The notes under the pieces: generated by a model
Database searches by the model: none
What the model was told of the DNA's origin: nothing
Seen by the model: the letters and a program-made list of their open reading frames with translations, nothing else
Translations under genes and position numbers: made by a program
In this document: in pieces, positions 1-33,425 of the stretch
Position numbering within the stretch: the stretch's first letter is position 1
How the letters are laid out: each line of letters opens with the position of its first letter
Assembly (NCBI GenBank): GCA_002269645.1
Contig: NIVC01003927.1
Location: 1-36,551, forward strand
DNA length: 36,551 bases
Reading direction: 5' to 3'
From: Macrostomum lignano
Lineage: Eukaryota

Positions 1-262
1 TTGAGAAATTGATGGAATGACGGAGAGGAGAGGCGCCCGGCTGTTCCACGGCAGAGGGGGCCGAGAGTCGCGGGACTTCAGCCCTCGAATTTCCAGCATC
101 CTCCCTCAGCGCCCACGCCTCATCTGTCCGAGGGCACACGATGGGAGCGAAGCGAAAGCCCAACATACGGACGGATACAAACTGGGTGGGATTAGTGGTT
201 TCGCTTTTCCTGTGTGCTTGAGTTGCCACGGGCACAAAGACAAAAAGTTCCGCAGCAGCCTG

Positions 263-2256
<1,994 letters not shown>

Positions 2257-3110
2257 ATGATATCGCTTTATCCGCATTTTACTGTGATCTATCATTTATC
2301 AGAAATTTCAGAAACATCAGAAAAGGCTATGCTTGCAATCTGTCAAAAAAGATGCCAGCTATAAATCATCCGCAATGCCTCTCAGTCTCCGGCCCCATCA
2401 AAACCAGAGGGCGGAGCACTAAGGGGTCGCAGCGAGGCTGAGGCCCGGGCAAAAAATCGAGTTAGCAATGCAAAGCGCAACGCCTTCTAGCTCACGAGGC
2501 TCGGCCTAAATACGAGTAAGAAGCTGCGAGCGCCTTCGCCTTCATCATCTACTTTGCCCCCCCCTCTCCCCTGTTCTCAGCATCCCTTCAGTGCCCATTA
2601 TTTCTCTAATTATACTATAGGCCGCTCCCCACGTGGCCCCTCTGTTGCTAAGGCAGATGAAGCAAAGCAGATTTTCTCCGAGTTAGAAAAAAATAAAGTT
2701 GCGGAAGCAAGCGCTGAAGGCTCCTCCAAGGTGGAGGGCCTGGCGGGGAGCGGCACCCGATCCTAAGCCGATTAGCAAGAATTCTTTGCGAAAAGACTGC
2801 TTAAATTCTTCCTCACAAATTGGAACTCTTTGAAACTGATTTGCTAAATTTAAATGGTTCGAGACTGTACACCCTGTGTGAGCGTCTGCGTGCCTGCCTA
2901 CAGTATTGGCGCTTGTACGCTTTTATGTGATCAGAAGTCAGCGTAAAGGGCTGTGGACGATGTCATCCAGTCGTTGCGCCAGGTGCCCCACAGCCGTCTT
3001 GCAATTATTATTTTATTATTAAACATCTTTCAGCCTACTTCCAGTAGGAAGCAAGGAATATACTTTAAAGGAAGGAGCCTGACCTCAATTTTCAAGGAAT
3101 GCATGTAGAA

Positions 3111-3410
3111 CAGGGGTTGCAGCCTAGTGGTTAGAGCGTCGGACTAGCGATTTGAAGGTCGGGGGTTCGATTCCCGATCCCACTGGAAAAAATAGTGTCC
3201 TTGAGCAAGACACTTAACTCTGCATTGCTTCAGTTCACCCAGATGTAAAATGGGTGCCAGCATTAGCTGGGGTAATTGAGGGTGTTGGCGACCCCCAGTC
3301 CTTGGACTGAACAGCCGTACGCAGCCTTCAGATGCGCGCGCAATAGCTGCGGCTGAGCTGTCGGTTGCACAGCTGGCCCAAATAGGGCAGGTGTAATCAA
3401 TTATTATCAA
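3111..3410 (+). mobile_element. tRNA-derived SINE with CORE-like central domain
   Basis: The tRNA-like head has an A box (TAGTGGTTAGAGC) and a B box (GGTTCGATTCC). The central GTGTCCTTGAGCAAGACACTTAAC...CAGTTCACCCAGATGTAAAATGGG resembles the MIR/CORE consensus as recalled. The tail is ATTATT. An 8-bp direct repeat ATGTAGAA flanks both sides (3103-3110 and 3411-3418). Confidence 0.85.
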
Positions 3411-3987
3411 ATGTAGAAAGCTAATTTTTTTCGCAATTTAATCGTTAAACGTGCGAAGCTTGGTGCAAAATAAAAATATTAGGTATATATTCCAGTTTTA
3501 AAGTTACTGCTGTCCTCTTATTGACCACAAATATGAATATACACATTAACTTCAGAGCATTACGCCTACAAAAACAAACAGGCCTTGACAACGGGCTTGC
3601 CAGTCCTCATAAACCATTGAGTTGCTCTGTCAATGCTGCCTTAAATAGGAGCAATTATTGCACAACTGTTTCAGTTGTCAACAAGATAATTAGCTAATTA
3701 GCTAGTTAGAACACTTTGTTATGCAGAATTTTCCTGTCTCCAAAAGCTTCTAGCTAGCTTTAATTTTGATTAATATTACACAGGAAAACAGCGTACCATT
3801 GCCATAATTACAGTCTGCAGATTTGCTCCGTAGAAAAGGTTGGAAATCAGATGGAAGGCGAGGGCTGCCGACAGTCGGGACTTTAGCCCAACTAAATTCT
3901 TTCTGCTTTCTTTATTTCTTACTTTCCTTTCTAACTTTCTCCATGTTAATCCGAGTGGCGACAACGGTGGTGGTGGGTGTCATGGGG

Positions 3988-4321
3988 TGTAGCTGGCGCC
4001 CCTTCTGTAACTGGCGCCACCTCTGTAGCTGGCGTCCCTCTGTAGCTGGCGCCCCCCTCTGTAGCTGGCGCCCCTTCTGTAGCTGGCGCCCCTTCTGTAG
4101 CTGGCGCCACCTCTGTAGCTGGCGTCCCTATTTACCTCGCGACCTTTCTGTAGCTGGCGCCCCTCTGTAGCTGGCGCCCCTTCTGTAGCTGGCGCCACCT
4201 CTGTAGCTGGCGTCCCTCTGTAGCTGGCGCCCCTTCTGTAGCTGGCGCCCCTTCTGTAGCTGGCGCCCCTCTGTAGCTGGTGTCCCTCTTTACCTGGCGA
4301 CCTTTCTGTAGCTGGCGCCCC
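3988..4321. repeat. ~19-21 bp minisatellite (CTGTAGCTGGCGCCCCTT)n
   Basis: About 15 units with core CTGGCGCC, plus two related interrupting units TTTACCT(C/G)GCGACCTTT near 4131 and 4289. Confidence 0.95.
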
Positions 4322-4821
4322 GCCTGAAGGTAGGCGGGTAAAAGGCGTAGCGTATTGTAGACCAGAACACAAAGGAAAATTACTCGATCTGTCTATTGAC
4401 TTGATTGCGCATAACTCAATTAGATGTATTTGCACAGAGTTTCTGTCACAAATTGCCTCTAGATGGTTGCTAGGTTACAAGGCATAACAATAGGGCTCAT
4501 GACTGCCTCTGTTGTACTACGTACACTGTGAGGCCTGCACAGCCCAACTGGTCGACTGTTTGACAGCCAATAACCCCAGAATCCAATTAGTCGGTGCCCA
4601 GTTATTGACTTATCCGCAGCTGCCATGCATGGCCCAAACATGGCCTAATTGGCTGAGCATCGCGGTGGATAGGGGGAGAGAAATGGGAGCAGAATGTAAC
4701 GATACAGACTGCGATCCAGTATTTCAGTCACGAAAAAGACTGCGCATACTCCAAGATTGAATTCGAGAAAACTGATACCCAATACATAGGAAATTGAAAG
4801 TTATCGAAGCAGCGACAGGCA

Positions 4822-6946
4822 ATGAAACCACAGACACCACCAAATAGCGAAAATGAAGGAGACAATTTCTTTGGTTTTGAGCTGTCCAGCCGCCTGACTG
4901 AGTGCGTGCGGTGCGATGACGTGCAGCGGATGCTGGCGGTGCTGTCTGCAGCTGGCCTCGGACCCGAACACCTCAGCGGCCATCTAAGCACCGACGCTGA
5001 GATGCAGCGATCGACTGGCTGCTGGACGAGATCCTCATCGGGCCGCACTTCATCTGCTCAGCGCTGCAGCGTCAGCTTCAGCACAATCGTTCACCTCAGC
5101 GTGTTCAGGCAGAGCTCACGGGTGCTGAGCTTCATCTCTGCTGAACAGCCTCACCTGCTCATGATGCGAGACGATTCTGGCTCAGGTGTGCTGCACTGTC
5201 TGGCGGAGGCGAGCGTGCTGCTCCGGCGGAAGAGTGCTACCGGCGGAAACACTCGCCTCTCGAGCAGTTCGACGCGTTCCAGACTCGACTGCTCTCCATG
5301 CTGAGCGACGTCGAGAGTCCGTACTCGGAGCAGCAGTGAGTCCGATATTGTGACTCATGTGTGAGTGAGCTCGAGCACTGTCTCGCAGCTAGTCATGCAG
5401 TCTCGCTCCGTTTCAGATCTGCATCGAGTCTGCTGCACTCGCTGTGTCTCATGGAGAACTCGGACGGACTGAGACCGCTGGAGTTATCTGTTCTCATCGG
5501 AGCATACTCCACATTTCAGTGCATCCTGCACGTAAAAGGCTACATTCTCAGTAAGCAGGTGAGTCACGGCATTCGAGTTCGCAACACGTTTGACCTGCGG
5601 GAGTACGATCTGATGAAGGGTGAGCGGAGGGACAAGAATCCCATGCTCATGCTCACTCTGATCTCGGCGTCGGAGGCGGATCCACTGTCGGAGTCGGGAC
5701 TGCTCGAGTGTCCCGTCATCAAGAAGTGGATGAAAGCAATTTTCTTGACATGCGCGGCACTGTGATGCTGAAAAGCATGTTTCTACCAACAATAGTGACC
5801 TATATGAGTCCTCTGACTCCGTTCATAGTTGCGGTGGCCAGCTTTGTCCAATTCGGTCACTACCTGCAGGTTGGATATCGGGAACACATTGGCTACTTGA
5901 GGTCGCAACTGCCCAGAGGTGGCTTCGGTGCCTCAAATACCAGTGCTCAAGAGCTCGCGGTGGATTTTGTGCGGTCCAGTTGCTCCTCCCTGCAAATTCT
6001 GGCTTTCCTCTCCAACAGGTCCAATCCAGACAACAACGCCGTGGTCTGTGTTTCCCCCGTTTTTTTCAACGATGTGAAGCGCTACGAGATGTTTCGGCTA
6101 CCTCTCCTGATTCCGTTGATAGTTTTGGGGTATCTGCTAGTTCAGGCTGTCATCATTGTGCACCGGACAAGGATAGTCCTCCGCAGTCCCCGATGGATGC
6201 CTCGCAGATCGAATTATCTCGTGCAGAGTCGTTTCTATGACAACGTGTTCATAATGAGCTTCATCAGTGGCCTGGTGTATGTCAGTAGCACTTTGGTTAT
6301 GCTCTGGATGCTGGACTGTTCAGACTATGTGCTGGAGCCTGCTACTGAAAACTACCGACTGCAAGTATTGTCAAGTGTCTCAGAGTGCTCCGCTGTACTA
6401 TTCATTTTCTTCAATCTGTTCAGCATCATTGAAGTGTACGAGATGATACTTAAACACGTGGCCTTCTTAGCCATATGCTTTCGCTGGATGTTGGCCAAGT
6501 TTTTAAACTCCATTCCACTGCTGTTTATCTGGGCCTACCTGGTGTTTGGCACCCTTCTGTACCTTGCCGACGTTAATGGTACCGATTTTCAATCGCATTT
6601 CGCAGTATTCTACTCACCGATGCTGTTGATTGTCAACCTGCTCCAGCTGTCGCCAAGGCTGTCTGTAATGATTTTGCACACTCTATTCGCTCTCATCGTG
6701 ACCATTAACATCCAGAACCTACTCATTGCCTACATTTTGCATGCGTTCAGTCACGTGGCAGTCAATTTCGAATTGATCTACCAGCTATCCAGCCTTAACT
6801 GCTCCTTCAAGGCGTGGAAGTTCTATTGGTTTCTGACTCGAATGCTCCGCTACTGGGCAAAGGAGGAGCAGGAGCCAAGGTACGTCCTGACCGTTTGCAG
6901 CTTGCGGCCACCTCGCAGCCGATTTTTTGACACGAACCGAAGCTGA
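4822..6946 (+). CDS. TRPV-like 6-TM cation channel, paralog 1 (two 1-nt deletions in this sequence)
   Basis: Exons 4822-5335 and 5417-6946, with an 81-nt GT-AG intron at 5336-5416. TRPV hallmarks: ankyrin motif RDDSGSGVLHCL, NSDGLRPLELS, FDLREYD linker, six hydrophobic segments and S6 QNLLIA. Restoring a G near 5262 (present in paralog 2) and a T in the TTTT run at 5740-5743 gives a continuous ~681-aa ORF colinear with paralog 2. It is either a recent pseudogene or an assembly error. Confidence 0.78.
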
Positions 6947-7150
6947 AGCGGAATAATTTTGGAAATCAGCCCAGTCTTAAACTGCATGCATCGGTCATTT
7001 TTACAGCTAACAGATGAAAATGCGATGAAAAACATATGCGGCATCTTCAATCTTTAACCTTTTATTCTGAATTATAGTATGAATACTTACACTAAAGTCA
7101 GTTAGCCGATGAAGAGGACTCCAACTACTATAGCTATGTAAGTGGTATAA

Positions 7151-7156
7151 AATAAA
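7151..7156 (+). terminator. candidate poly(A) signal AATAAA of channel paralog 1
   Basis: First AATAAA seen, ~205 nt after the stop at 6946, in AT-rich sequence. Alternatives lie at 7610-7619. Confidence 0.35.
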
Positions 7157-8003
7157 AAAAAATAAGGGCGTAATGTTTGCTAAGAGTAATAACTTGGAAA
7201 ATACACAAATATTTCTGATTACTTCAGTACATGATAAGCAATGCATTTCGACTTGTCTATAATGGCAAGAGGTTTTAAATTTATTTTTTCAAGAAGGCAA
7301 CTTGGCCCGATTGGTTTTGGATAACACGCGACCTAGAGAGAAAAAAACTATTCATAACGTTTCCGCTTTGAGTATAAAACGATTAAATCTACGGGCTCGT
7401 ACATGTATATTTATTTATTTAAATCACTAGTAAATTTCTTCTCTTTCGTGAATCTTAAAACCTTAGAACCTTAGAAAATTTATGGCTTATTTTCATCTCC
7501 ATGCACGCTACCTTATGTTACTTAGAGTTTTTTGCACTTATTAGTATTATTATTAATATAATATTTTTGATATATTTTTCATAGGCACAGTGAAGTGTAC
7601 ATGCCTAACAATAAATAAAGTCAGGGCCGCTGTACACTCCTGTGTGAGTGTGTGCCTGTGCGTATGACTGCGTACGTATCCGCGCGCTTGTGTGCCTGCT
7701 CAGGGGAGTCGGCGGAATGGGCAGCAATGCCTCTCGCCGGTTGTGTGACAATGTCGCTTACTGCCTCTAATAAAAACGGTAAATGCCCGTTCGATGCAAT
7801 GTATCCTACAAAAATAGAAAAATTTGTTTAAAGAACACTAAGACTTACTTATCCTGCTTCTGCTTTGTAATAAGCAAAATGAGGCCTTCAAACGATTTTC
7901 AATTATCTGGCATCCCCTGCTACAACCAATGGTCCATAGAACCAGCCAAAAAGTCGATAAGACTAGTTAAGGTTGTAAAAAGAATGCTTAAATTTACTAC
8001 TCA

Positions 8004-8047
8004 AATTATTGATAACACACTGAGCAAGCAGTGTGTTATCAATAATT
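8004..8047. other. perfect 19-bp inverted repeat with 6-nt loop
   Basis: AATTATTGATAACACACTG (8004-8022), loop AGCAAG, then CAGTGTGTTATCAATAATT (8029-8047). The arms are exact reverse complements. Confidence 0.95.
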
Positions 8048-8165
8048 CTCAGAAATGTAATTAAGTCGATAACGCTTCCTGGATGGCTGTGCCAACTCTG
8101 TGTGAATCGACGAGTAGAGAGCGACTCAACAAACATTTGCACTTCGGAAGCAAGAGGCAATCATT

Positions 8166-8200
8166 TATAAAGAGAGGTGGGCGGTAGCTGAAATGTAGTC
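8166..8200 (+). promoter_or_regulatory. candidate TATA box + initiator of channel paralog 2
   Basis: TATAAAG at 8166-8172 and Inr-like TAGTC with the A at 8197 (31 nt downstream). The ATG is at 8235. Confidence 0.45.
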
Positions 8201-8234
8201 AAGGGATACTCTTGAGTGCTCAGTATCCAAGACC

Positions 8235-10322
8235 ATGCCTCAAGAAGATTCAGGATTTGTCTTCGACCCTGAGCTGTCTAATCGCCTGACGGAGTGCCTG
8301 CGGTGCGATGACGTGCAGCGGATGCTGGCGGTGCTGTCTGCAGCTGGCCTCGGACCCGAACACCTCAGCGGCCATCTAAGCACCGACGCTGAGATGCAGC
8401 GATCGACTGGCTGCTGGACGAGATCCTCATCGGGCCGCACTTCATCTGCTCAGCGCTGCAGCGTCAGCTTCAGCACAATCGTTCACCTCAGCGTGCTCAG
8501 GCAGAGCTCACGGGTGCTGAGCTTCATCTCTGCTGAACAGCCTCACCTGCTCATGATGCGAGACGATTCTGGCTCAGGTGTTCTGCACTGTCTGGCGGAG
8601 GCGAGCGTGCTGCTCCGGCGGAAGAGTGCTACCGGCGGAAACACTCGCCTCTCGGAGCAGTTCGACGCGTTCCAGACTCGACTGCTCTCCATGCTAAGCG
8701 ACGTCGAGAGTCCGTACTCGGAGCAGCAGTGAGTCCGATATTGTGTCTCATGTGTGAGTGAGCTCGAGCACTGTCTCGCAGCTGGTCATGCAGTCTCGCT
8801 CCGTTTCAGATCTGCATCGAGTCTGCTGCACTCGCTGTGTCTCATGGAGAACTCGGACGGACTGAGACCGCTGGAGTTATCTGTTCTCATCGGAGCATAC
8901 TCCACATTTCAGTGCATCCTGCACGTAAAAGGCTACATTCTCAGTAAGCAGGTGAGTCACGGCATTCGAGTTCGCAACACGTTTGACCTGCGGGAGTACG
9001 ATCTGATGAAGGGTGAGCGGAGGGACAAGAATCCCATGCTCATGCTCACTCTGATCTCGGCGTCGGAGGCGGATCCACTGTCGGAGTCGGGACTGCTCGA
9101 GTGTCCTGTTATCAAGAAGTGGATGAAAGCAGTTGTTAGCGAGATGTCCTGCGCCATGTACATGCACAGAGCAGCCATTGTCATATTCACTTTGATCTTC
9201 TCTCCCATTACATTTTCGTTCGGGACCATATCCGCGATGCTGTGCGGCGGCTACCAGCTTCAGTTGGGGTTCTCCGAGTTCACCCAATATATGCGGTCGC
9301 TGATTAATGGCTCGCTGTCCAACGGGTCCTCAACCGAGGAATTCATTCGGCATGGCTGCCAGCCAGAAAACCTATTCCGCTTCCTGATCACGGATCTAAA
9401 TCCCGCGAACAGCCGTGTGCTGCTCCGGTCTCCAGTTTTCTTTACGCGGGTCACCCGGTCCAACATCATTGCAAATCTCATCAGCGTCCTGATCCTCTTA
9501 GCAATATTTCAGGCCTTTAGACTGGTCACCATTGTTTACAACGTTGTCAAAGATCGACAGTTCTATTCATCCCGATGGATGCCTGCCTCCAAGTCCGATT
9601 TTGTAGTTCAGTCGCACTTCTATGACGCAGTGTACGCGCTGTGCTTTGCAACGGGTCTGATCTATATAGTCTTGGCCAGCTTGTTGAGCAGATTCCTAGA
9701 CTGCTCAGCTCTTGTCCTGGGCATTTCCAGCGGCACTTTCTGGCTGTCGGTGCTAACGCAGTCCGCTGAGTGCTCGGCTGTTTTGTACTTCTTCTTCAAC
9801 ATGTTCGGCCTATTTGAGGCCTACGAAATGGCAGTGAAGCAGGCGGCTTTTCTCAGCATCTGCTTCCGGAAGATGTTGGTGAACTTCCTGCTGGTACTGC
9901 CGCTGCTGCTAGTCTGGGCCTACCTGGTGTTCGGCACCCTGCTCTACATGACAGACTTTCGAGGCCAGGAGTTCAGCTCGCATCGTCACGTGCTGTACTC
10001 CCCGCTTCGGCTGATTATTAACACGGCCAACCTGCCGCACCGGCTGTCTACCAGCCTTCTGCACACGCTGTTCGTTATCAGCGTGAGCATCAGCGTGCAG
10101 AACTTCATCATTGGCTACATTGTGAGCGCGTTCAAAGAGGTTTCGTCAAAATTTGACATTGTATACCATTTGAGCGGCTTGGATGCCGCCTTGCGCACCT
10201 GGCGTCTCTACCCGGGTCTGCTCAGGGTGGTGCATCTGTGCAAGAGTAGCCGGAGTCCATTCTGTAAGAGACCGAGCAGCACTGCAATCCGGGTGTGGAA
10301 TCTTCGACCAACGGCCGGATAA
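8235..10322 (+). CDS. TRPV-like 6-TM cation channel, paralog 2 (intact, ~668 aa)
   Basis: Exons 8235-8728 and 8810-10322 total 2007 nt. The 81-nt intron 8729-8809 (GTGAGT...CTCGCTCCGTTTCAG) joins the two track ORFs in frame. Ankyrin repeats, the NSDGLRPLELS/FDLREYD linker, S1-S6, the S4-S5 motif YEM...FLSICFRKML and S6 QNFIIG align by eye to TRPV5/6, OSM-9 and Iav family motifs. Confidence 0.88.
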
Positions 10323-11345: not shown

Positions 11346-11575
11346 TCCACCGGGGTGCCAGTGTCGAACAGTGTCAGTGTGTCTACCAGGGTGCCAGTGT
11401 CGAACAGTGTCAGTGTGTCCACCGGGGTGTCAGTGTGTCTACCAGGGTGTCAGTGTGTCTACCAGGGTGTTTGTGTCTATCAGAGTGTCAGTGCCTCTAC
11501 CGCGGCATGTCAGAATCTCTTCTGGAGTGTCAGCGCATCCACAGGAGTGTCAGTGCATCGGAAGGAGTGTCAGCG
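11346..11575. repeat. degenerate CAGTGT-based tandem repeat downstream of the Post2 stop (probable 3' UTR)
   Basis: Units such as CCACCGGGGTGCCAGTGTCGAACAGTGTCAGTGTGT are repeated and decay toward 11575. Confidence 0.8.
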
Positions 11576-11788: not shown

Positions 11789-14198
11789 TCAAGAGCAAAT
11801 GCCGCCCTGCGGATGGACTACAAGCGAGGGATCCTTCAGGTCCACGCCTTGGTGGTGCATGTCCTCCTGCTTGAAGCTGCCCAGCTGCTCCATGTGGCCC
11901 ATCAGCATGGCTCCATGATGGTGCAGGCCGTGATGATGCTGCTGGTGAAGCTGATGGTGAGCCATGGCTGGACTGACTGACTCGGCTGACACGTTGTCCT
12001 CGGATGACCTTGTCCTGGTCTGCAGCTTCTTCTTCTTCATTCGACGGTTTTGAAACCAGACTTTCACCTGCGGGCGAGTGAGCGGGACAATCTCCATCAT
12101 AGTGAGTCTGGCGGACTTTTAGGACATTCCACATGATAAAAAAGTGTTCTTTTTAATAAAAGGTTCGCAATCAAAACAGGATAGATCTACTGGGGTATTG
12201 TGAGACAGACTTTTAAGGATTCTACTCTCATCGCCACTACAAGTAGTTGACCAACCCTTACGAAAGGGTAGCGATAGGGTCAGATTGGTTCGAGTAGATT
12301 CCCACAGTCACAATCACTTGTTACGGCTGGGGTTAGGGTTAGGGTTGCACACCCAAAGCACCCATATTATTCCCCGCGGTGAGTCCGAGGTTTATTGTCA
12401 GTTCTATCTATAGCAATGCACCACAGAATCGCGAAAGAAGTTCCTGATTAATCTGAAAATATGATGATCCACTCGCTTTCCATAAATAATGAACTGTGTT
12501 TTTTAGACTACGTTCTCCGGTCTGTCATAGACTAATTTTTTTCGAATAAGTTGTATAATATAATTAGTAGTCTACTTCCTAGGGTGACTATCAATAGTAT
12601 GAAACGAGCATGGCTTACCTGACGCTCAGTCAGATGCAGTTGGCAAGAAATTTCCCATCGTTTTTGCCGGGTGATGTAGGCGTTCATGAGGAACTCGCGC
12701 TCCAGCATGGCCGTCTGGTAGCGAGTGTACGGCTTGCGCTTCTTGCGGCTGCGCACTGCGGGGGCGGCGGTGGGGGAGAATCAGGTGAGGCCGGGTGGGG
12801 AATCACGTGAGAAGGGGTGGGGAATCAGGTGAGAGCGGGTGGGGAATCACGTGAGAAGGGGTGGGGAATCAGGTGAGAGCGGGTGGGGAATCACATGAGA
12901 AGGGGTGGGAATCAGGTGAGGGCAGGTGGGGAATCACGTGAGAAGGGGTGGGGAATCAGGTGAGAGCGGGTGGGGAATCATGTGAGAAGGGGTGGGAATC
13001 AGGTGAGGGCGGGTGGGGAATCACGTGAGAAGGGGTGGGGAATCAGGCGAGAGCGGGTGGGGAATCAGGTGAAGGCGGGTGGGAAATCAGGTGAGGGCGG
13101 GTGGGGAATCAGGTGAGGGCGGGTGGGGAATCAGGCGAGAGCGGGTGGGGAATCAGGTGAGGGCGGGTGGGGAATCAGGTGAGGGCGGGTGGGGAATCAC
13201 GTGAGAAGGGGTGGGGAATCAGGCGAGAGCGGGTGGGGAATCAGGTGAAGGCAGGTGGGGAATCAGGTAAAGGCGGGTGGGGAATCAGGTGAGGGCGGGT
13301 GGGGAATTGTGTGAATTGCAGGAGGATAATCAAGGGGAATTGCGGGAGGGGAATCAGGGGAATTGCGGGAGGATAATTAGGGGAATTGCGAGAGGATAAT
13401 CAGGGTATTGCGGGAGGATAATCAGCAGGGGAAGTGCGGGAGGTGAATCAGGGGAATTGCGGGACGTAAATCAGGTGAATTGCAGGAGGGGAATCAGGGG
13501 AATTGCGGGAGGTGAATCAAGCTAATTGCGGGAGGTGAATCAGGTGAATTGCGGGAGGTGAATCAGGGGAATTGCGAGGGGGGATCACGTGAATTGCGGG
13601 AGAGGAATTGGGTGAATTCTTCTTAATAAAAAACAGACGGACGAGTTGGCCTCTTTCCTCTAGGATAGGGTCTACAAACAGAAATTTTTGCAAAAAAGAT
13701 TGCGCTAAAAGCCACACTTCCCCTTAGACAGTTTAGGATCAATTAGTAAAATGCGCAGATTAACCATAAATTTTCTTTGATAATCATCAGACTCCGCGCA
13801 GACGCCAGTAGCAACTGTCAAAAGGCCAGCACGCTATTTCTTGTCTCTTGGCTTTTAAAAGGTGAGGCGCTCTCAGCAACAGGGCAGATGATCGGTCAAA
13901 TTTGGGTAGCTGCCTGGAAGCTGCTAATGGATTTTTCGGTTTTTAAGTGCCGCTAAGAGAGCACAGGTGACCCCCATTGACCCCCCCTCCGTGGACCCCG
14001 AAGCCCCGTGGGATGCACGTACCGCCGGCTGCGGAGTCTGGATCAGCGAACTCGTCCAGCCGGGGCAGCATCATCTCGTGCGGAGCAAACAGGTACGAGC
14101 CACCGCCGACGCCACCGCCAGCGCCGCCGACTCCGACGACACCTCCGCGAAGCTGCTGCTGCTGCTGCTGCTGCTGTTGTTGTTGCTGTTGTTGCTGA

Positions 14199-14230
<32 letters not shown>

Positions 14231-14803
14231 ATGATGATGACTGTGAACTGCTGCAGCGGCCGCGGCCCCATAGAAGTCGGTGGGCGAGTGCAGGCCGGGG
14301 CGGCCGTGCCCGAAGCTGTGCGGGAAGCCGCCGCCAGTGGCAGCGGCCATGTGGCTGAGGAGGCCCTGCGACTGGGCCGCCTGCATGAAGTCCGGCGGGC
14401 CCGGGTACGCGCACGGGATCGGCGTGCCGCACTTGCCGACGCCGCCTGAACCCGGATGACCCGGCATGCCGCCGCCTCCGCCGCATCCGCCGTTCACCGC
14501 CTGGGCGCTGCCGTAGTGAACTCGCGGATCGTACGGCCACATGTTGGCCGCGGCCTGCAAAGCTCCGTACCCGCCGCCGCCGCCGACGCTCCCGCCGCTG
14601 CTGTTGCCGTCGCTGTTGCGGCCGTCTTGAGGAAGCGAGCCGACGCAGCCTCCACCGCCGCCGCCACCGCCGCCGCCGCCAGAGCCCGACATTGCAGCGG
14701 CTGCGGCTGCTGCTGAAACTGCCGGCCCAGCGATTGCGGCGTAGGACGGTAGGCGGGAGCCGGGCGGGAACAGCCCGCTGCCGCTGGTTTCCATGGATAC
14801 CAT
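11789..14803 (-). CDS. Post2: posterior (Abd-B class) Hox protein Post2, 398 aa, 3 coding exons
   Basis: Exons (minus strand) 14803-14023, 12755-12619 and 12067-11789 total 1197 nt. The introns are GT-AG: phase 1 (GTACGT...CCCCGCAG) and phase 0 (GTAAGC...CCCGCAG). The spliced homeodomain [43 protein letters not shown]|[15 protein letters not shown] carries the lophotrochozoan Post2 signatures ([25 protein letters not shown]). The second intron lies between homeodomain residues 44 and 45. Confidence 0.95.
12777..13612. repeat. G-rich compound minisatellite in Post2 intron 1
   Basis: ~21-bp GGGTGGGGAATCA(G/C)GTGAG(GGC/AAG) units run to ~13300, followed by related GGAATTGCGGGAGGTGAATCAG units. 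Confidence 0.95.
14153..14239 (-). repeat. coding polyHis/polyGln trinucleotide tract in Post2 exon 1
   Basis: A CAG/CAA/CAT run encoding approximately HHHH-Q9-H-Q15. PolyAla and polyGly tracts occur in the same exon. Confidence 0.95.
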
Positions 14804-17947: not shown

Positions 17948-18323
<376 letters not shown>

Positions 18324-18807
18324 GTAGTGCCGAGACTGATTGGCTGGGCAGCTATACGCATGCGCGGTCACCCCAGCCTCTATCGCTGCTGCCGGCGCTG
18401 CACCCCCTTCTCACTGCCAAGTCATGGATGGAAGACATCTTTGCACTTGTCCCAGAAGTCAGGCCATGCAATTTGCTCCCCATTTTCCCCTCCTCGCCCC
18501 TTGGGAGGCAGCGGGTATCCCCAACTGACCGACAGAGCGCTTGTAAATTTATTTATAAGCGGAGTGAGATTTCGTATACTCCCTTAGGCTTTTAGGAAAT
18601 GAGAGATTTTATTTCGCAATTGAATTCCAGAGGGACACAGTGGCTTGCTGGTGTGAGCTGTGAACTGGGGCGGCAAAGGGAGGGTTGGTCTTCTGAATGC
18701 CTCTAGCTCCATCCTCTGACCCTCAGGGAGTGACAATAGGGACAGGGAGTGACAGTGACAGTAGTAGTGACAGTACTCTCAGTCTGCCGAGAGCTCCCAT
18801 GACTAGA

Positions 18808-19266: not shown

Positions 19267-19721
19267 AAAATTGCTCCTATAGAAGCAGGCTAGCAAGATA
19301 TGAAGCCATAGAGAGTCTTGCTAGGGGCGCAAAAGCAGCTGGATTCGCCGACTTGCTTCTATTTTTATTATTGCCGGCTTTTTAGGCTCACATTTTACTG
19401 GCCGCCGCTGCTTCCGGCGCTACTGACAATCCGACAAACCTCTTGGAACATTCTCTACACTTGCAGCAAATCTTCTTTTCTTCATAGCCAAACAGACAGG
19501 GGCGGGCGCTGCCCCCTTGTTATGCCCGAGACGGGAGGCCTCCCCTCTGCTTTATGGCTCAGCGCCGCGATACAGCGAGTGGTTGGGGGAGCGGAGCGCC
19601 ATAAACTCGGATCATTTCAAATTCCTCCTGCATTTTTCCTTTTTTCGCGCTTCTTTTTTTCTTTTTGGGCATTTGCTTTTAGTCTGCTTGTCTGTTCTCC
19701 TGTCTGCCTGCCTGTCATTCT

Positions 19722-20084
<363 letters not shown>

Positions 20085-32862: not shown

Positions 32863-33425
<563 letters not shown>

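What the first reader, a model, noticed from the sequence alone, without database searches (positions are those of the whole stretch)
4822..10322. Tandem TRPV-like channel pair: homogenised cytoplasmic N-terminus on deeply diverged transmembrane halves
Seen: 4907-5738 and 8299-9131 differ by only 7 substitutions and 1 indel by my hand comparison (~99% identical), and this includes the intron. Identity stops abruptly after IKKWMKA, just before S1. The S1-S6 halves are then roughly 30% (S1-S3) to ~53% (S4 to TRP helix) identical in protein, and the first ~20 codons also differ. Inference: this is an old duplication with recent gene conversion confined to the ankyrin/linker region. Known: TRPV ankyrin/linker regions mediate subunit contacts and ligand regulation, and invertebrate TRPVs such as OSM-9/OCR and Nan/Iav work as heteromers. 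A plausible undescribed system is therefore a pair of subunits kept assembly-compatible by conversion while their pore and sensor domains diverge.
Basis: partly seen in the sequence, partly recalled or inferred. Interest (0 to 1): 0.75.

Follow-up and report, generated by a model that had tools for sequence, protein, structure and literature searches.

The report
Partly homogenised tandem TRPV-like channel genes
Two neighbouring, anciently duplicated genes for a divergent TRPV-type ion channel share a recently copied 0.85-kb N-terminal segment, an ordinary partial gene conversion, and the upstream copy is broken by two one-base deletions as assembled.

Summary
Positions 4878-5741 and 8270-9134 are 98.4% identical. 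The core, 4907-5738 vs 8299-9131, differs by exactly 7 substitutions and 1 indel, and it includes an 81-nt GT-AG intron. Identity collapses within a few bases after IKKWMKA. The transmembrane halves are 40% identical in protein, with synonymous sites saturated (dS about 1.9, against about 0.02-0.04 in the tract).

The genes are TRPV-like. Neither Pfam nor PDB matches them directly. Distant relatives from flatworm, nemertean and metagenome sources carry Ank and Ion_trans domains. A family profile hits TRPV6/5/3/4/2 at 6e-44. An AlphaFold model of copy B (pLDDT 78, pTM 0.79) matches only TRPV structures over its full length.

The best explanation is an old tandem duplication followed by a recent non-reciprocal transfer (gene conversion) of the ankyrin-linker-pre-S1 module.

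One 1-nt deletion lies inside the tract (5262). A second lies 2-5 nt past its 3' edge (5740-5743). As assembled, only B (668 aa) is intact, so A is either a freshly disabled copy or carries assembly indels.

The "heteromer kept assembly-compatible" idea has no support here. This is a new member of a known kind, of modest interest.

The parts
4822..6946 (+). Gene A, the upstream TRPV-like paralogue. ATG at 4822, exon 1 to 5335, intron 5336-5416, exon 2 from 5417 to the stop at 6944-6946. It is not translatable in one frame as assembled.
   Evidence: tblastn of protein B hits A in three frames: frame 1 for 4870-5262, frame 3 for 5262-5756 and frame 2 for 5807-6877. ORFs are listed.
8235..10322 (+). 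Gene B, the downstream TRPV-like paralogue. It is intact: exon 1 8235-8728, 81-nt intron 8729-8809, exon 2 8810-10322, giving 668 aa.
   Evidence: The spliced translation is open. The exon-1 frame and the exon junction are validated by alignment to 44 family members. AlphaFold model: pLDDT 78.4, pTM 0.79.
4878..5741 (+). Homogenised tract, copy in A (core 4907-5738).
   Evidence: 98.4% identical to 8270-9134. Differences are listed. GC is 0.58, against 0.49 in the TM half of A.
8270..9134 (+). Homogenised tract, copy in B. It encodes residues about 13-273: helical ankyrin-like repeats, the linker beta-hairpin and the pre-S1 helix up to IKKWMKA.
   Evidence: dS 0.037, dN 0.007 over the whole tract.
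5336..5416 (+). 81-nt GT-AG intron of A, inside the tract. Its counterpart in B is 8729-8809. The two differ at 2 positions (5353, 5391).
   Evidence: Donor CA|GTGAGT and acceptor TTTCAG|A are read. An in-frame TGA at the intron start makes splicing obligatory.
5261..5262 (+). Frameshift 1 in A: a 1-nt deletion (GG in B, G in A) inside the tract, within otherwise identical sequence.
   Evidence: gap opposite 8654. In one search the reading frame changes from 1 to 0 and the ATG frame stops at 5302-5304.
5739..5743 (+). Frameshift 2 in A: one base is missing in the run ATTTT, 2-5 nt beyond the last tract-identical base. Frame 0 stops at 5763-5765, and the S1-S6 ORF continues in frame 2.
   Evidence: Sequence read; frames. 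Both copies have 23 residues between 'KA' and 'SP' once a single base is restored.
5741..6946 (+). Diverged S1-S6, TRP helix and C-terminal half of A: an open 401-codon frame.
   Evidence: 40% identical to B. NG86 gives dS 1.92 and dN 0.62.
9135..10322 (+). Diverged S1-S6, TRP helix and C-terminal half of B.
   Evidence: family alignment of S4 to the TRP helix; helices 264-311, 381-418, 433-459, 464-496, 501-545, 577-611; TRP helix 613-631; C-terminal strand 657-663.

Best explanation
Two same-strand tandem genes, 3.39 kb start to start, encode divergent members of the TRPV/TRPV-like branch of TRP channels. They have a short ankyrin-type N-terminus, a linker with a beta-hairpin, six TM helices with a pore loop, a TRP helix and a C-terminal beta-strand.

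The duplication is ancient. Much more recently, a segment of about 0.83-0.86 kb was copied non-reciprocally from one gene into the other (gene conversion in the broad sense). The segment runs from codon about 13-22 to three residues after the conserved pre-S1 Trp, and it includes the only intron.

Shown:
- The tract exists, with sharp borders.
- Synonymous and intron sites in it are as identical as the rest.
- The flanks are saturated.
- The fold is TRPV.

Inferred:
- The transfer was probably B to A, because the 3' junction is in frame in B but one base short in A. This suggests an imprecise, microhomology-type resolution in sequence that was already too diverged to pair.
- Copy A therefore became, or has since become, a non-functional chimaera. 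It also carries a second 1-nt deletion inside the tract.
- I put about 0.55 on A being truly disrupted rather than mis-called by the assembly.

Copy B is the only demonstrably intact channel gene.
For: - Tract and borders.
- The intron is included, with 2/81 differences.
- Divergence contrast: dS is 0.037 for the whole tract (4 synonymous differences in the core) against dS about 1.9 and dN 0.62 in the TM half.
- Only one such pair exists in the window.
- The tract joins both genes at homologous, colinear positions. The N-terminal tails (GDNFFGFELS vs DSGFVFDPELS) still look anciently homologous. This argues for a whole-gene old duplication plus a patch, not a chimeric assembly.
- Tract GC is 0.58 against 0.49/0.53 in the TM halves, compatible with GC-biased conversion.
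- Third-position identity rises from 31% (random expectation 28%) in S1-S3 to 52% in pore-S6-TRP. This is a weak hint that older exchanges also occurred.
- TRPV identity: the exhaustive HMMER search finds 93 distant relatives, which carry Ion_trans and Ank domains. The family profile hits TRPV6 at 6e-44, with all top hits TRPV. The AlphaFold model's top 50 Foldseek hits are all TRPV1/2/3/5/6 over about 670-700 columns.
- Frame disruptions of A. No credible splice rescue.
Against: - No reads are available, so neither the tract junctions nor the two 1-nt deletions can be verified. Both deletions are in homopolymer runs (GG, TTTTT), the typical place for long-read or polishing errors. Polishing errors also concentrate at repeat borders, which could explain where the second one lies.
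- No orthologues exist in any database searched, so the classic phylogenetic signature of conversion could not be obtained.
- The direction of transfer rests on a single coincidence. The chance of a random frameshift within about 5 nt of a tract edge is roughly 0.5-2%.
- A still has a 401-codon open TM frame, so if it is a pseudogene it is very young.
Confidence: 0.7

Rival explanations
1. Both genes are functional subunits of a heteromeric channel. Recurrent gene conversion, favoured or tolerated by selection, keeps the cytoplasmic ankyrin/linker module identical while the sensor and pore domains diverge. Under this model the two frameshifts in A are assembly errors.
For: - Both frame changes are single-base deletions in homopolymer runs.
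- The TM half of A keeps a 401-codon open frame, and dN/dS across the TM halves is well below 1.
- Mismatches are denser at both tract edges, with 5 in the first 29 bp and 3 in the last 28 bp.
- There may be an intermediate-age stratum in S5-S6. Both points fit repeated events with variable end points.
- The tract ends at a structural domain boundary, the start of the pre-S1/S1 helix.
Against: - As assembled, A cannot encode a full-length subunit and splicing does not rescue it.
- The first deletion lies in sequence context identical to B over tens of bases, so a context-dependent sequencing error should have hit both copies.
- There is no evidence at all for co-expression or co-assembly.
- The inter-subunit contacts of TRPVs also involve the C-terminal strand and the TM domains, which lie outside the tract and have diverged.
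- A uniformly 71%-identical tandem pair of the same family in another genome shows no such mosaic.
Confidence: 0.13
2. The near-identical tract is an assembly or polishing artefact: one copy was overwritten by reads of the other, or there is a chimeric join.
For: The window is extremely repeat-rich, so the region is hard to assemble. An indel sits exactly at the tract border.
Against: - The two copies are not identical. They differ by 13 substitutions and 1 indel, spread along the tract.
- The tract is embedded colinearly and at homologous positions in two otherwise very different genes, with unalignable flanks on both sides. Cross-mapping needs pre-existing high similarity, and a mis-join would not restore gene colinearity twice.
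Confidence: 0.05
3. The N-terminal module is simply under much stronger purifying selection than the TM half, and no transfer occurred.
For: The linker region is the most conserved part of the family in distant relatives (best stretches 4-130).
Against: - Synonymous sites (about 4/190 in the core) and the 81-nt intron (2/81) are as identical as replacement sites.
- In the same genes, synonymous sites in the TM half are saturated.
- The identity ends within a few bases.
Confidence: 0.01

Closest known systems
Vertebrate TRPV channels (TRPV5/6 and TRPV1-4)
   Same: - Overall architecture and fold match: helical ankyrin-type N-terminus, linker beta-hairpin, pre-S1 helix, S1-S6 with pore helix, TRP helix and C-terminal beta-strand.
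- The family profile hits TRPV6 at 6e-44.
- All top 50 Foldseek hits are TRPVs, with TM-scores of 0.5-0.57 over the full length.
- The conserved S6 Asn and the 'LH..F' motif are present.
   Different: - Identity to any solved TRPV is only 11-14%.
- The window proteins alone match nothing directly in Pfam or PDB.
- The N-terminus is shorter, about 270 residues before S1.
- The pore loop is about 5 residues shorter, with Asn (B) or Gln (A) where the family and the TRPVs usually have the filter Asp.
- The TRP-box Trp is replaced by Tyr, and 'LQR' by 'LSG'/'LSS'.
- The genes are almost intron-less.
TRPVL (vanilloid-like) family and unclassified TRPV-related genes of lophotrochozoans
   Same: TRPVL is described as a sister clade of TRPV retained in invertebrates such as molluscs and annelids, with further unclassified TRPV-near genes in abalone (PMC12980990). 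The nearest relatives of the window genes come from a flatworm (Macrostomum lignano, 35% over linker-S1) and a nemertean (Lineus longissimus). The window itself is spiralian.
   Different: No TRPVL reference sequences were available here, so placement in TRPV, in TRPVL or in a separate clade was not tested.
Partial (domain-limited) gene conversion between tandem paralogues
   Same: A sharp-edged tract of near identity, including non-coding sequence, sits inside otherwise old paralogues. When one partner is disabled, the pattern is gene-pseudogene conversion. From my own knowledge, examples are RHD/RHCE, CYP21A2/CYP21A1P and the globin genes. Homogenisation alongside diversification in clustered spider silk genes is reported in PMC9779670.
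   Different: - The flanks here are far more diverged (unalignable DNA) than in the textbook cases.
- One border coincides with a 1-nt frame error.
- No case in TRP channels turned up in the paper searches.
Heteromeric invertebrate TRPVs (OSM-9/OCR-2, Nanchung/Inactive)
   Different: Those partners are ancient paralogues without homogenised modules. For the window pair there is no evidence of co-expression or co-assembly, and one member is out of frame.

Membership tests
TRPV-type TRP channel (TRPV/TRPVL clade) | Six-TM channel fold with a pore helix between S5 and S6, closest to TRPV among solved structures | tested here: met
   The AlphaFold model of B has pLDDT 78.4 and pTM 0.79. All top 50 Foldseek PDB hits are TRPV1/2/3/5/6, E 1e-9 to 3e-7, probability 1.00. 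The family profile hits TRPV6 at 6e-44. Caveat: the model's alignment consists of the distant family members.
TRPV-type TRP channel (TRPV/TRPVL clade) | N-terminal ankyrin repeat domain | tested here: inconclusive
   Pfam finds no Ank match in B, even at E<1. Six of 37 family members do have Ank hits. B residues about 84-122 fit the family motif P..LA...GS..V....L..G.D....D..G.N.IH.L. The model shows paired helices, and the Foldseek alignments span the TRPV ankyrin domain.
TRPV-type TRP channel (TRPV/TRPVL clade) | Linker beta-hairpin plus C-terminal beta-strand (the three-stranded sheet typical of TRPVs) | tested here: met
   DSSP on the model gives strands 209-215, 218-224 and 657-663. That they pair with each other is inferred, because coordinates were not inspected.
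TRPV-type TRP channel (TRPV/TRPVL clade) | TRP helix with a TRP box (I-W-K-L-Q-R type) after S6 | tested here: inconclusive
   The helix is present at 613-631. The motif is degenerate: B has DIVYHLSGL and A has ELIYQLSSL, with Tyr in place of Trp, against the family consensus I..LQ.L.
TRPV-type TRP channel (TRPV/TRPVL clade) | Acidic residue in the selectivity filter | tested here: not met
   At the 'MLNM.D' position of the family, B has Asn and A has Gln, and the loop after it is about 5 residues shorter. The position is variable in the family (D, E, N, S, T).
TRPV-type TRP channel (TRPV/TRPVL clade) | Phylogenetic placement inside TRPV or TRPVL with reference sequences | not tested
   No curated TRPVL/TRPV reference set was available. 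Named relatives are only 'uncharacterized' or 'ANK_REP_REGION' proteins.
Gene conversion between paralogues | A tract of near identity bounded on both sides by much higher divergence within the same gene pair | tested here: met
Gene conversion between paralogues | Identity extends equally to synonymous and intronic sites, which excludes selection as the cause | tested here: met
   The intron has 2/81 differences. Tract dS is 0.037 against about 1.9 outside.
Gene conversion between paralogues | Tree incongruence: the tract groups by species and the flanks group by paralogue | not testable with these tools
   No orthologue closer than 35% identity in 15 billion proteins.
Gene conversion between paralogues | Both copies and all four junctions confirmed by spanning reads | not testable with these tools
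   No read data.

The most novel reading that the evidence does not exclude
Suppose the two single-base deletions in copy A are assembly errors. The locus would then be a pair of functional TRPV-like subunits whose cytoplasmic ankyrin-linker-pre-S1 module is kept identical by recurrent conversion, bounded by selection, while the sensor and pore halves have diverged to 40% identity and both carry a non-acidic filter residue. This would be a modular 'shared cytoplasmic head, different channel bodies' arrangement not described for TRP channels.
Probability: 0.12. Interest if true: 0.6.

Novelty: new member of a known kind. Interest (0 to 1): 0.3.

Why it matters
- It gives a clean, well-delimited example of domain-limited sequence transfer between very old tandem paralogues. 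One junction looks imprecise, which bears on how conversion can occur, and can break genes, when flanks are no longer homologous.
- It documents an unannotated, nearly intron-less, highly divergent TRPV-related family in spiralians. This family escapes Pfam and direct PDB searches.
- For genome annotation, copy A should be flagged as a possible pseudogene or assembly-error site rather than merged with B or 'repaired'.
- It does not open a long-standing question.

Tried and rejected
- Direct Pfam, PDB phmmer and a window-only profile against PDB gave nothing. The family link needed the exhaustive HMMER search.
- The word-indexed homologue searches with B and with the 45-sequence alignment found no relatives, so no orthologues and no N-terminal versus TM trees could be made.
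- I looked for GT-AG introns that would restore a single frame in A. Only non-consensus combinations exist, and each deletes conserved ankyrin, linker or S1 residues, so I rejected them.
- I looked for further copies of the tract or of the gene in the window and found none, so the tract is not a dispersed repeat or transposon.
- I checked whether mosaic identity is a family habit. A tandem pair in another genome (L001) is uniformly 71% identical, so it is not.
- A retro-copy origin is rejected because the intron is included.
- An alternative reading frame for exon 1, which has ankyrin-looking stretches in other frames, is rejected by the family alignment.
- Paper searches for gene conversion in TRP or TRPV genes found no precedent.


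Full report
**Observation.** A self-comparison of the region gives one strong match, 4878-5741 against 8270-9134: 98.38% identity over 865 columns, with 13 mismatches and one gap. The only other match is weak, at 67.5% between 6383-6749 and 9768-10134. Between 4907-5738 and 8299-9131 there are seven substitutions (5104, 5190, 5303, 5353, 5391, 5714, 5717) and one indel (the G at 8654 has no counterpart after 5261). Five further mismatches lie in 4878-4906 and one at 5739. Outside these limits the DNA is unalignable. No other copy of the tract or of the gene exists in the 36.5-kb window.

**Gene models.**
- Copy B reads from ATG 8235 to 8728. It skips an 81-nt intron with good consensus sites (CA|GTGAGT ... 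TTTCAG|A, 8729-8809; an in-frame TGA at its start makes splicing obligatory). It then continues from 8810 to the stop at 10320-10322, giving an intact 668-aa protein.
- The exon-1 frame and the junction are confirmed by alignment with 44 distant family members. The motif P..LA...GS..V....L..G.D....D..G.N.IH.L and the block ENxxGLRPLELAA..G both match.
- Copy A (ATG 4822, stop 6944-6946) has the same structure, with its intron at 5336-5416. It cannot be read in one frame: tblastn with protein B finds A in frame 1 up to 5262, frame 0 from 5262 to about 5740, and frame 2 from there on.
- The second is one missing base in the run ATTTT at 5739-5743, 2-5 nt after the last tract-identical base. With one base restored, A and B have the same 23 residues between 'KA' and the conserved 'SP' of S1.
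- A scan of all GT-AG combinations finds no credible intron that rescues either shift without deleting conserved residues.

**Divergence profile.**
- Within the tract, Nei-Gojobori estimates are dS 0.037 and dN 0.007, with only four synonymous and one replacement difference in the core. The intron differs at 2 of 81 positions.
- In the S1-to-C-terminus half the proteins are 40% identical, with pS 0.69, dS about 1.9 (saturated) and dN 0.62.
- The contrast in neutral divergence is therefore at least 50-fold, and it switches within a few bases. Purifying selection cannot explain this, because the intron and the synonymous sites share the identity.
- Third-position identity is at the random level in S1-S3 (31% against 28% expected). 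It rises to 52% in the pore-S6-TRP helix part. The contrast gives Fisher p 0.0016 for all codons, 0.04 for conserved residues only and 0.14 for four-fold sites. This is only a weak hint of an older exchange.
- The tract is richer in GC than the TM halves, 0.58 against 0.49/0.53.

**What the genes are.**
- Neither protein matches Pfam at E<1 or any PDB sequence. The word-indexed search of 5.8 billion proteins found nothing.
- The exhaustive HMMER search of 1.84 billion representatives found 93 distant relatives, the best at only 76 bits.
- The named relatives come from the flatworm Macrostomum lignano (35% identity from linker to S1) and the nemertean Lineus longissimus. One metagenomic protein aligns over 536 columns at 25%.
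- These relatives are about 580-660 aa long and carry Ion_trans (14 of 37) and ankyrin (6 of 37) Pfam domains.
- A profile of the family hits TRPV6 at 6e-44, followed by TRPV5, V3, V4 and V2, from the ankyrin domain to the TRP helix.
- An AlphaFold model of B built on this alignment has pLDDT 78.4 and pTM 0.79. It shows helical repeats, a linker beta-hairpin (209-224), long TM helices, a TRP helix (613-631) and a C-terminal strand (657-663).
- Its 50 best Foldseek matches in the PDB are all TRPV1/2/3/5/6, aligned over the whole length.
- 'TRPV-like' is therefore supported, through intermediates and structure prediction rather than direct similarity.
- Departures from TRPV: the pore loop is about five residues shorter; Asn (B) or Gln (A) stands where most relatives and the TRPVs have the filter Asp; and the TRP box is degenerate, with Tyr for Trp.
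- I could not test whether the family belongs to TRPV proper, to the described sister family TRPVL (PMC12980990) or to neither.
- Relatives elsewhere are single-exon genes and also occur in tandem, but the pair I examined is uniformly 71% identical with no mosaic.

**Mechanism.**
- The tract is flanked on both sides by old divergence, so a single unequal crossover cannot produce it. A double exchange, that is a non-reciprocal copy of about 0.85 kb, is required.
- The tract joins both genes at colinear, homologous positions, and the two short N-terminal tails still look anciently related. An old whole-gene duplication with a recent patch is therefore the simplest history.
- An assembly artefact is unlikely. 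The copies differ at 14 positions, and cross-mapping would need pre-existing similarity that the flanks lack.
- The 3' junction is in frame in B and one base short in A. A random frameshift would fall within about 5 nt of a tract edge with a probability of roughly 0.5-2%.
- I read this as suggesting that A was the recipient, and that the copied strand was rejoined imprecisely in sequence already too diverged to pair. That would have disabled A at once, and the second deletion inside the tract would then be later decay.
- A competing reading is that both deletions are homopolymer or polishing errors, which do concentrate at repeat borders.
- The identical context of the first site in B, which reads GG, argues mildly against a systematic error.
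- I put about 0.55 on A being truly disrupted.
- The 401-codon open TM frame of A is compatible with very recent inactivation, since only a handful of substitutions are expected at this divergence.

The tract corresponds to the cytoplasmic module up to the start of the pre-S1/S1 helix, so the 'module' description is accurate. However, nothing shows that the two proteins co-assemble. One of them is out of frame as assembled. The other TRPV inter-subunit elements, the C-terminal strand and the TM domains, lie in the diverged part. I give that model about 0.13.

**Context and verdict.**
- The window comes from a spiralian animal absent from the protein databases. A Post2/Abd-B-class Hox gene lies convergent to B, 1.5 kb downstream. 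Its homeobox is split after codon 44, and its best named matches are Post2 genes of annelids, nemerteans, a phoronid and molluscs.
- The window is about one third micro- and minisatellite.
- The finding is a real, neat case of domain-limited gene conversion in a divergent TRPV-related gene pair, with a probable fresh pseudogene.
- It is a new member of a known kind, and interest is modest.

Noticed in passing
window 11789-14803, minus strand: An Abd-B/Post2-class Hox gene lies convergent with gene B. It has a Gly/Gln-rich first exon (14803 to about 13946), a homeobox exon 12755-12619, a 551-nt intron (12618-12068) that splits the homeodomain after codon 44, and a last exon 12067-11789. Pfam Homeodomain scores 2.4e-21. 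The best named hits are Post2 genes of annelids, nemerteans, a phoronid and molluscs, so the window is spiralian and the channel pair sits next to a posterior Hox gene.
   Followed up: partly
window 264-2252, 17948-18327, 19700-20083, 32863-33425 and about 25 further arrays: The load of micro- and minisatellites is extraordinary, roughly a third of the window. It includes a 2-kb (TATC)n array and many 15-44-bp minisatellites at 90-100% unit identity.
   Followed up: no
window 3988-4321 and 11349-11501: Minisatellites bracket the gene pair. An 18-bp unit repeated about 19 times lies 0.5 kb upstream of gene A. A 20/36-bp unit array lies between gene B and the Hox gene. Such arrays are often recombination-prone, but a link to the conversion was not tested.
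   Followed up: no
window 3113-3182, plus strand: A weak tRNA-like match (Rfam RF00005, 31.6 bits against a gathering score of 29) that ARAGORN does not call. It may be a degenerate tRNA or a tRNA-derived repeat.
   Followed up: no
window 6541-6790 vs 9927-10180 (pore, S6, TRP helix): Third-codon-position identity between A and B is 52% here, against 31% (random level) in S1-S3. This may be a much older exchange stratum or simply a codon-usage constraint. The statistical support is weak once amino-acid conservation is controlled.
   Followed up: partly
L001 1-1806 and 10001-11842 (ENA ERZ26052378 contig); L002 10001-12559 (Lineus longissimus OU342994.1): Distant relatives of the channel family are single-exon genes and occur as tandem pairs in other invertebrate genomes. 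They are annotated only as hypothetical or uncharacterized, with weak Ion_trans/YVC1_C Pfam hits, so the family as a whole appears undescribed by name.
   Followed up: partly
window 9135-10322 and 5741-6946 (pore loop): Both window proteins have a non-acidic residue, Asn in B and Gln in A, at the position of the selectivity-filter Asp of relatives and TRPVs. The turret after it is about 5 residues shorter. Ion selectivity may therefore be atypical.
   Followed up: no
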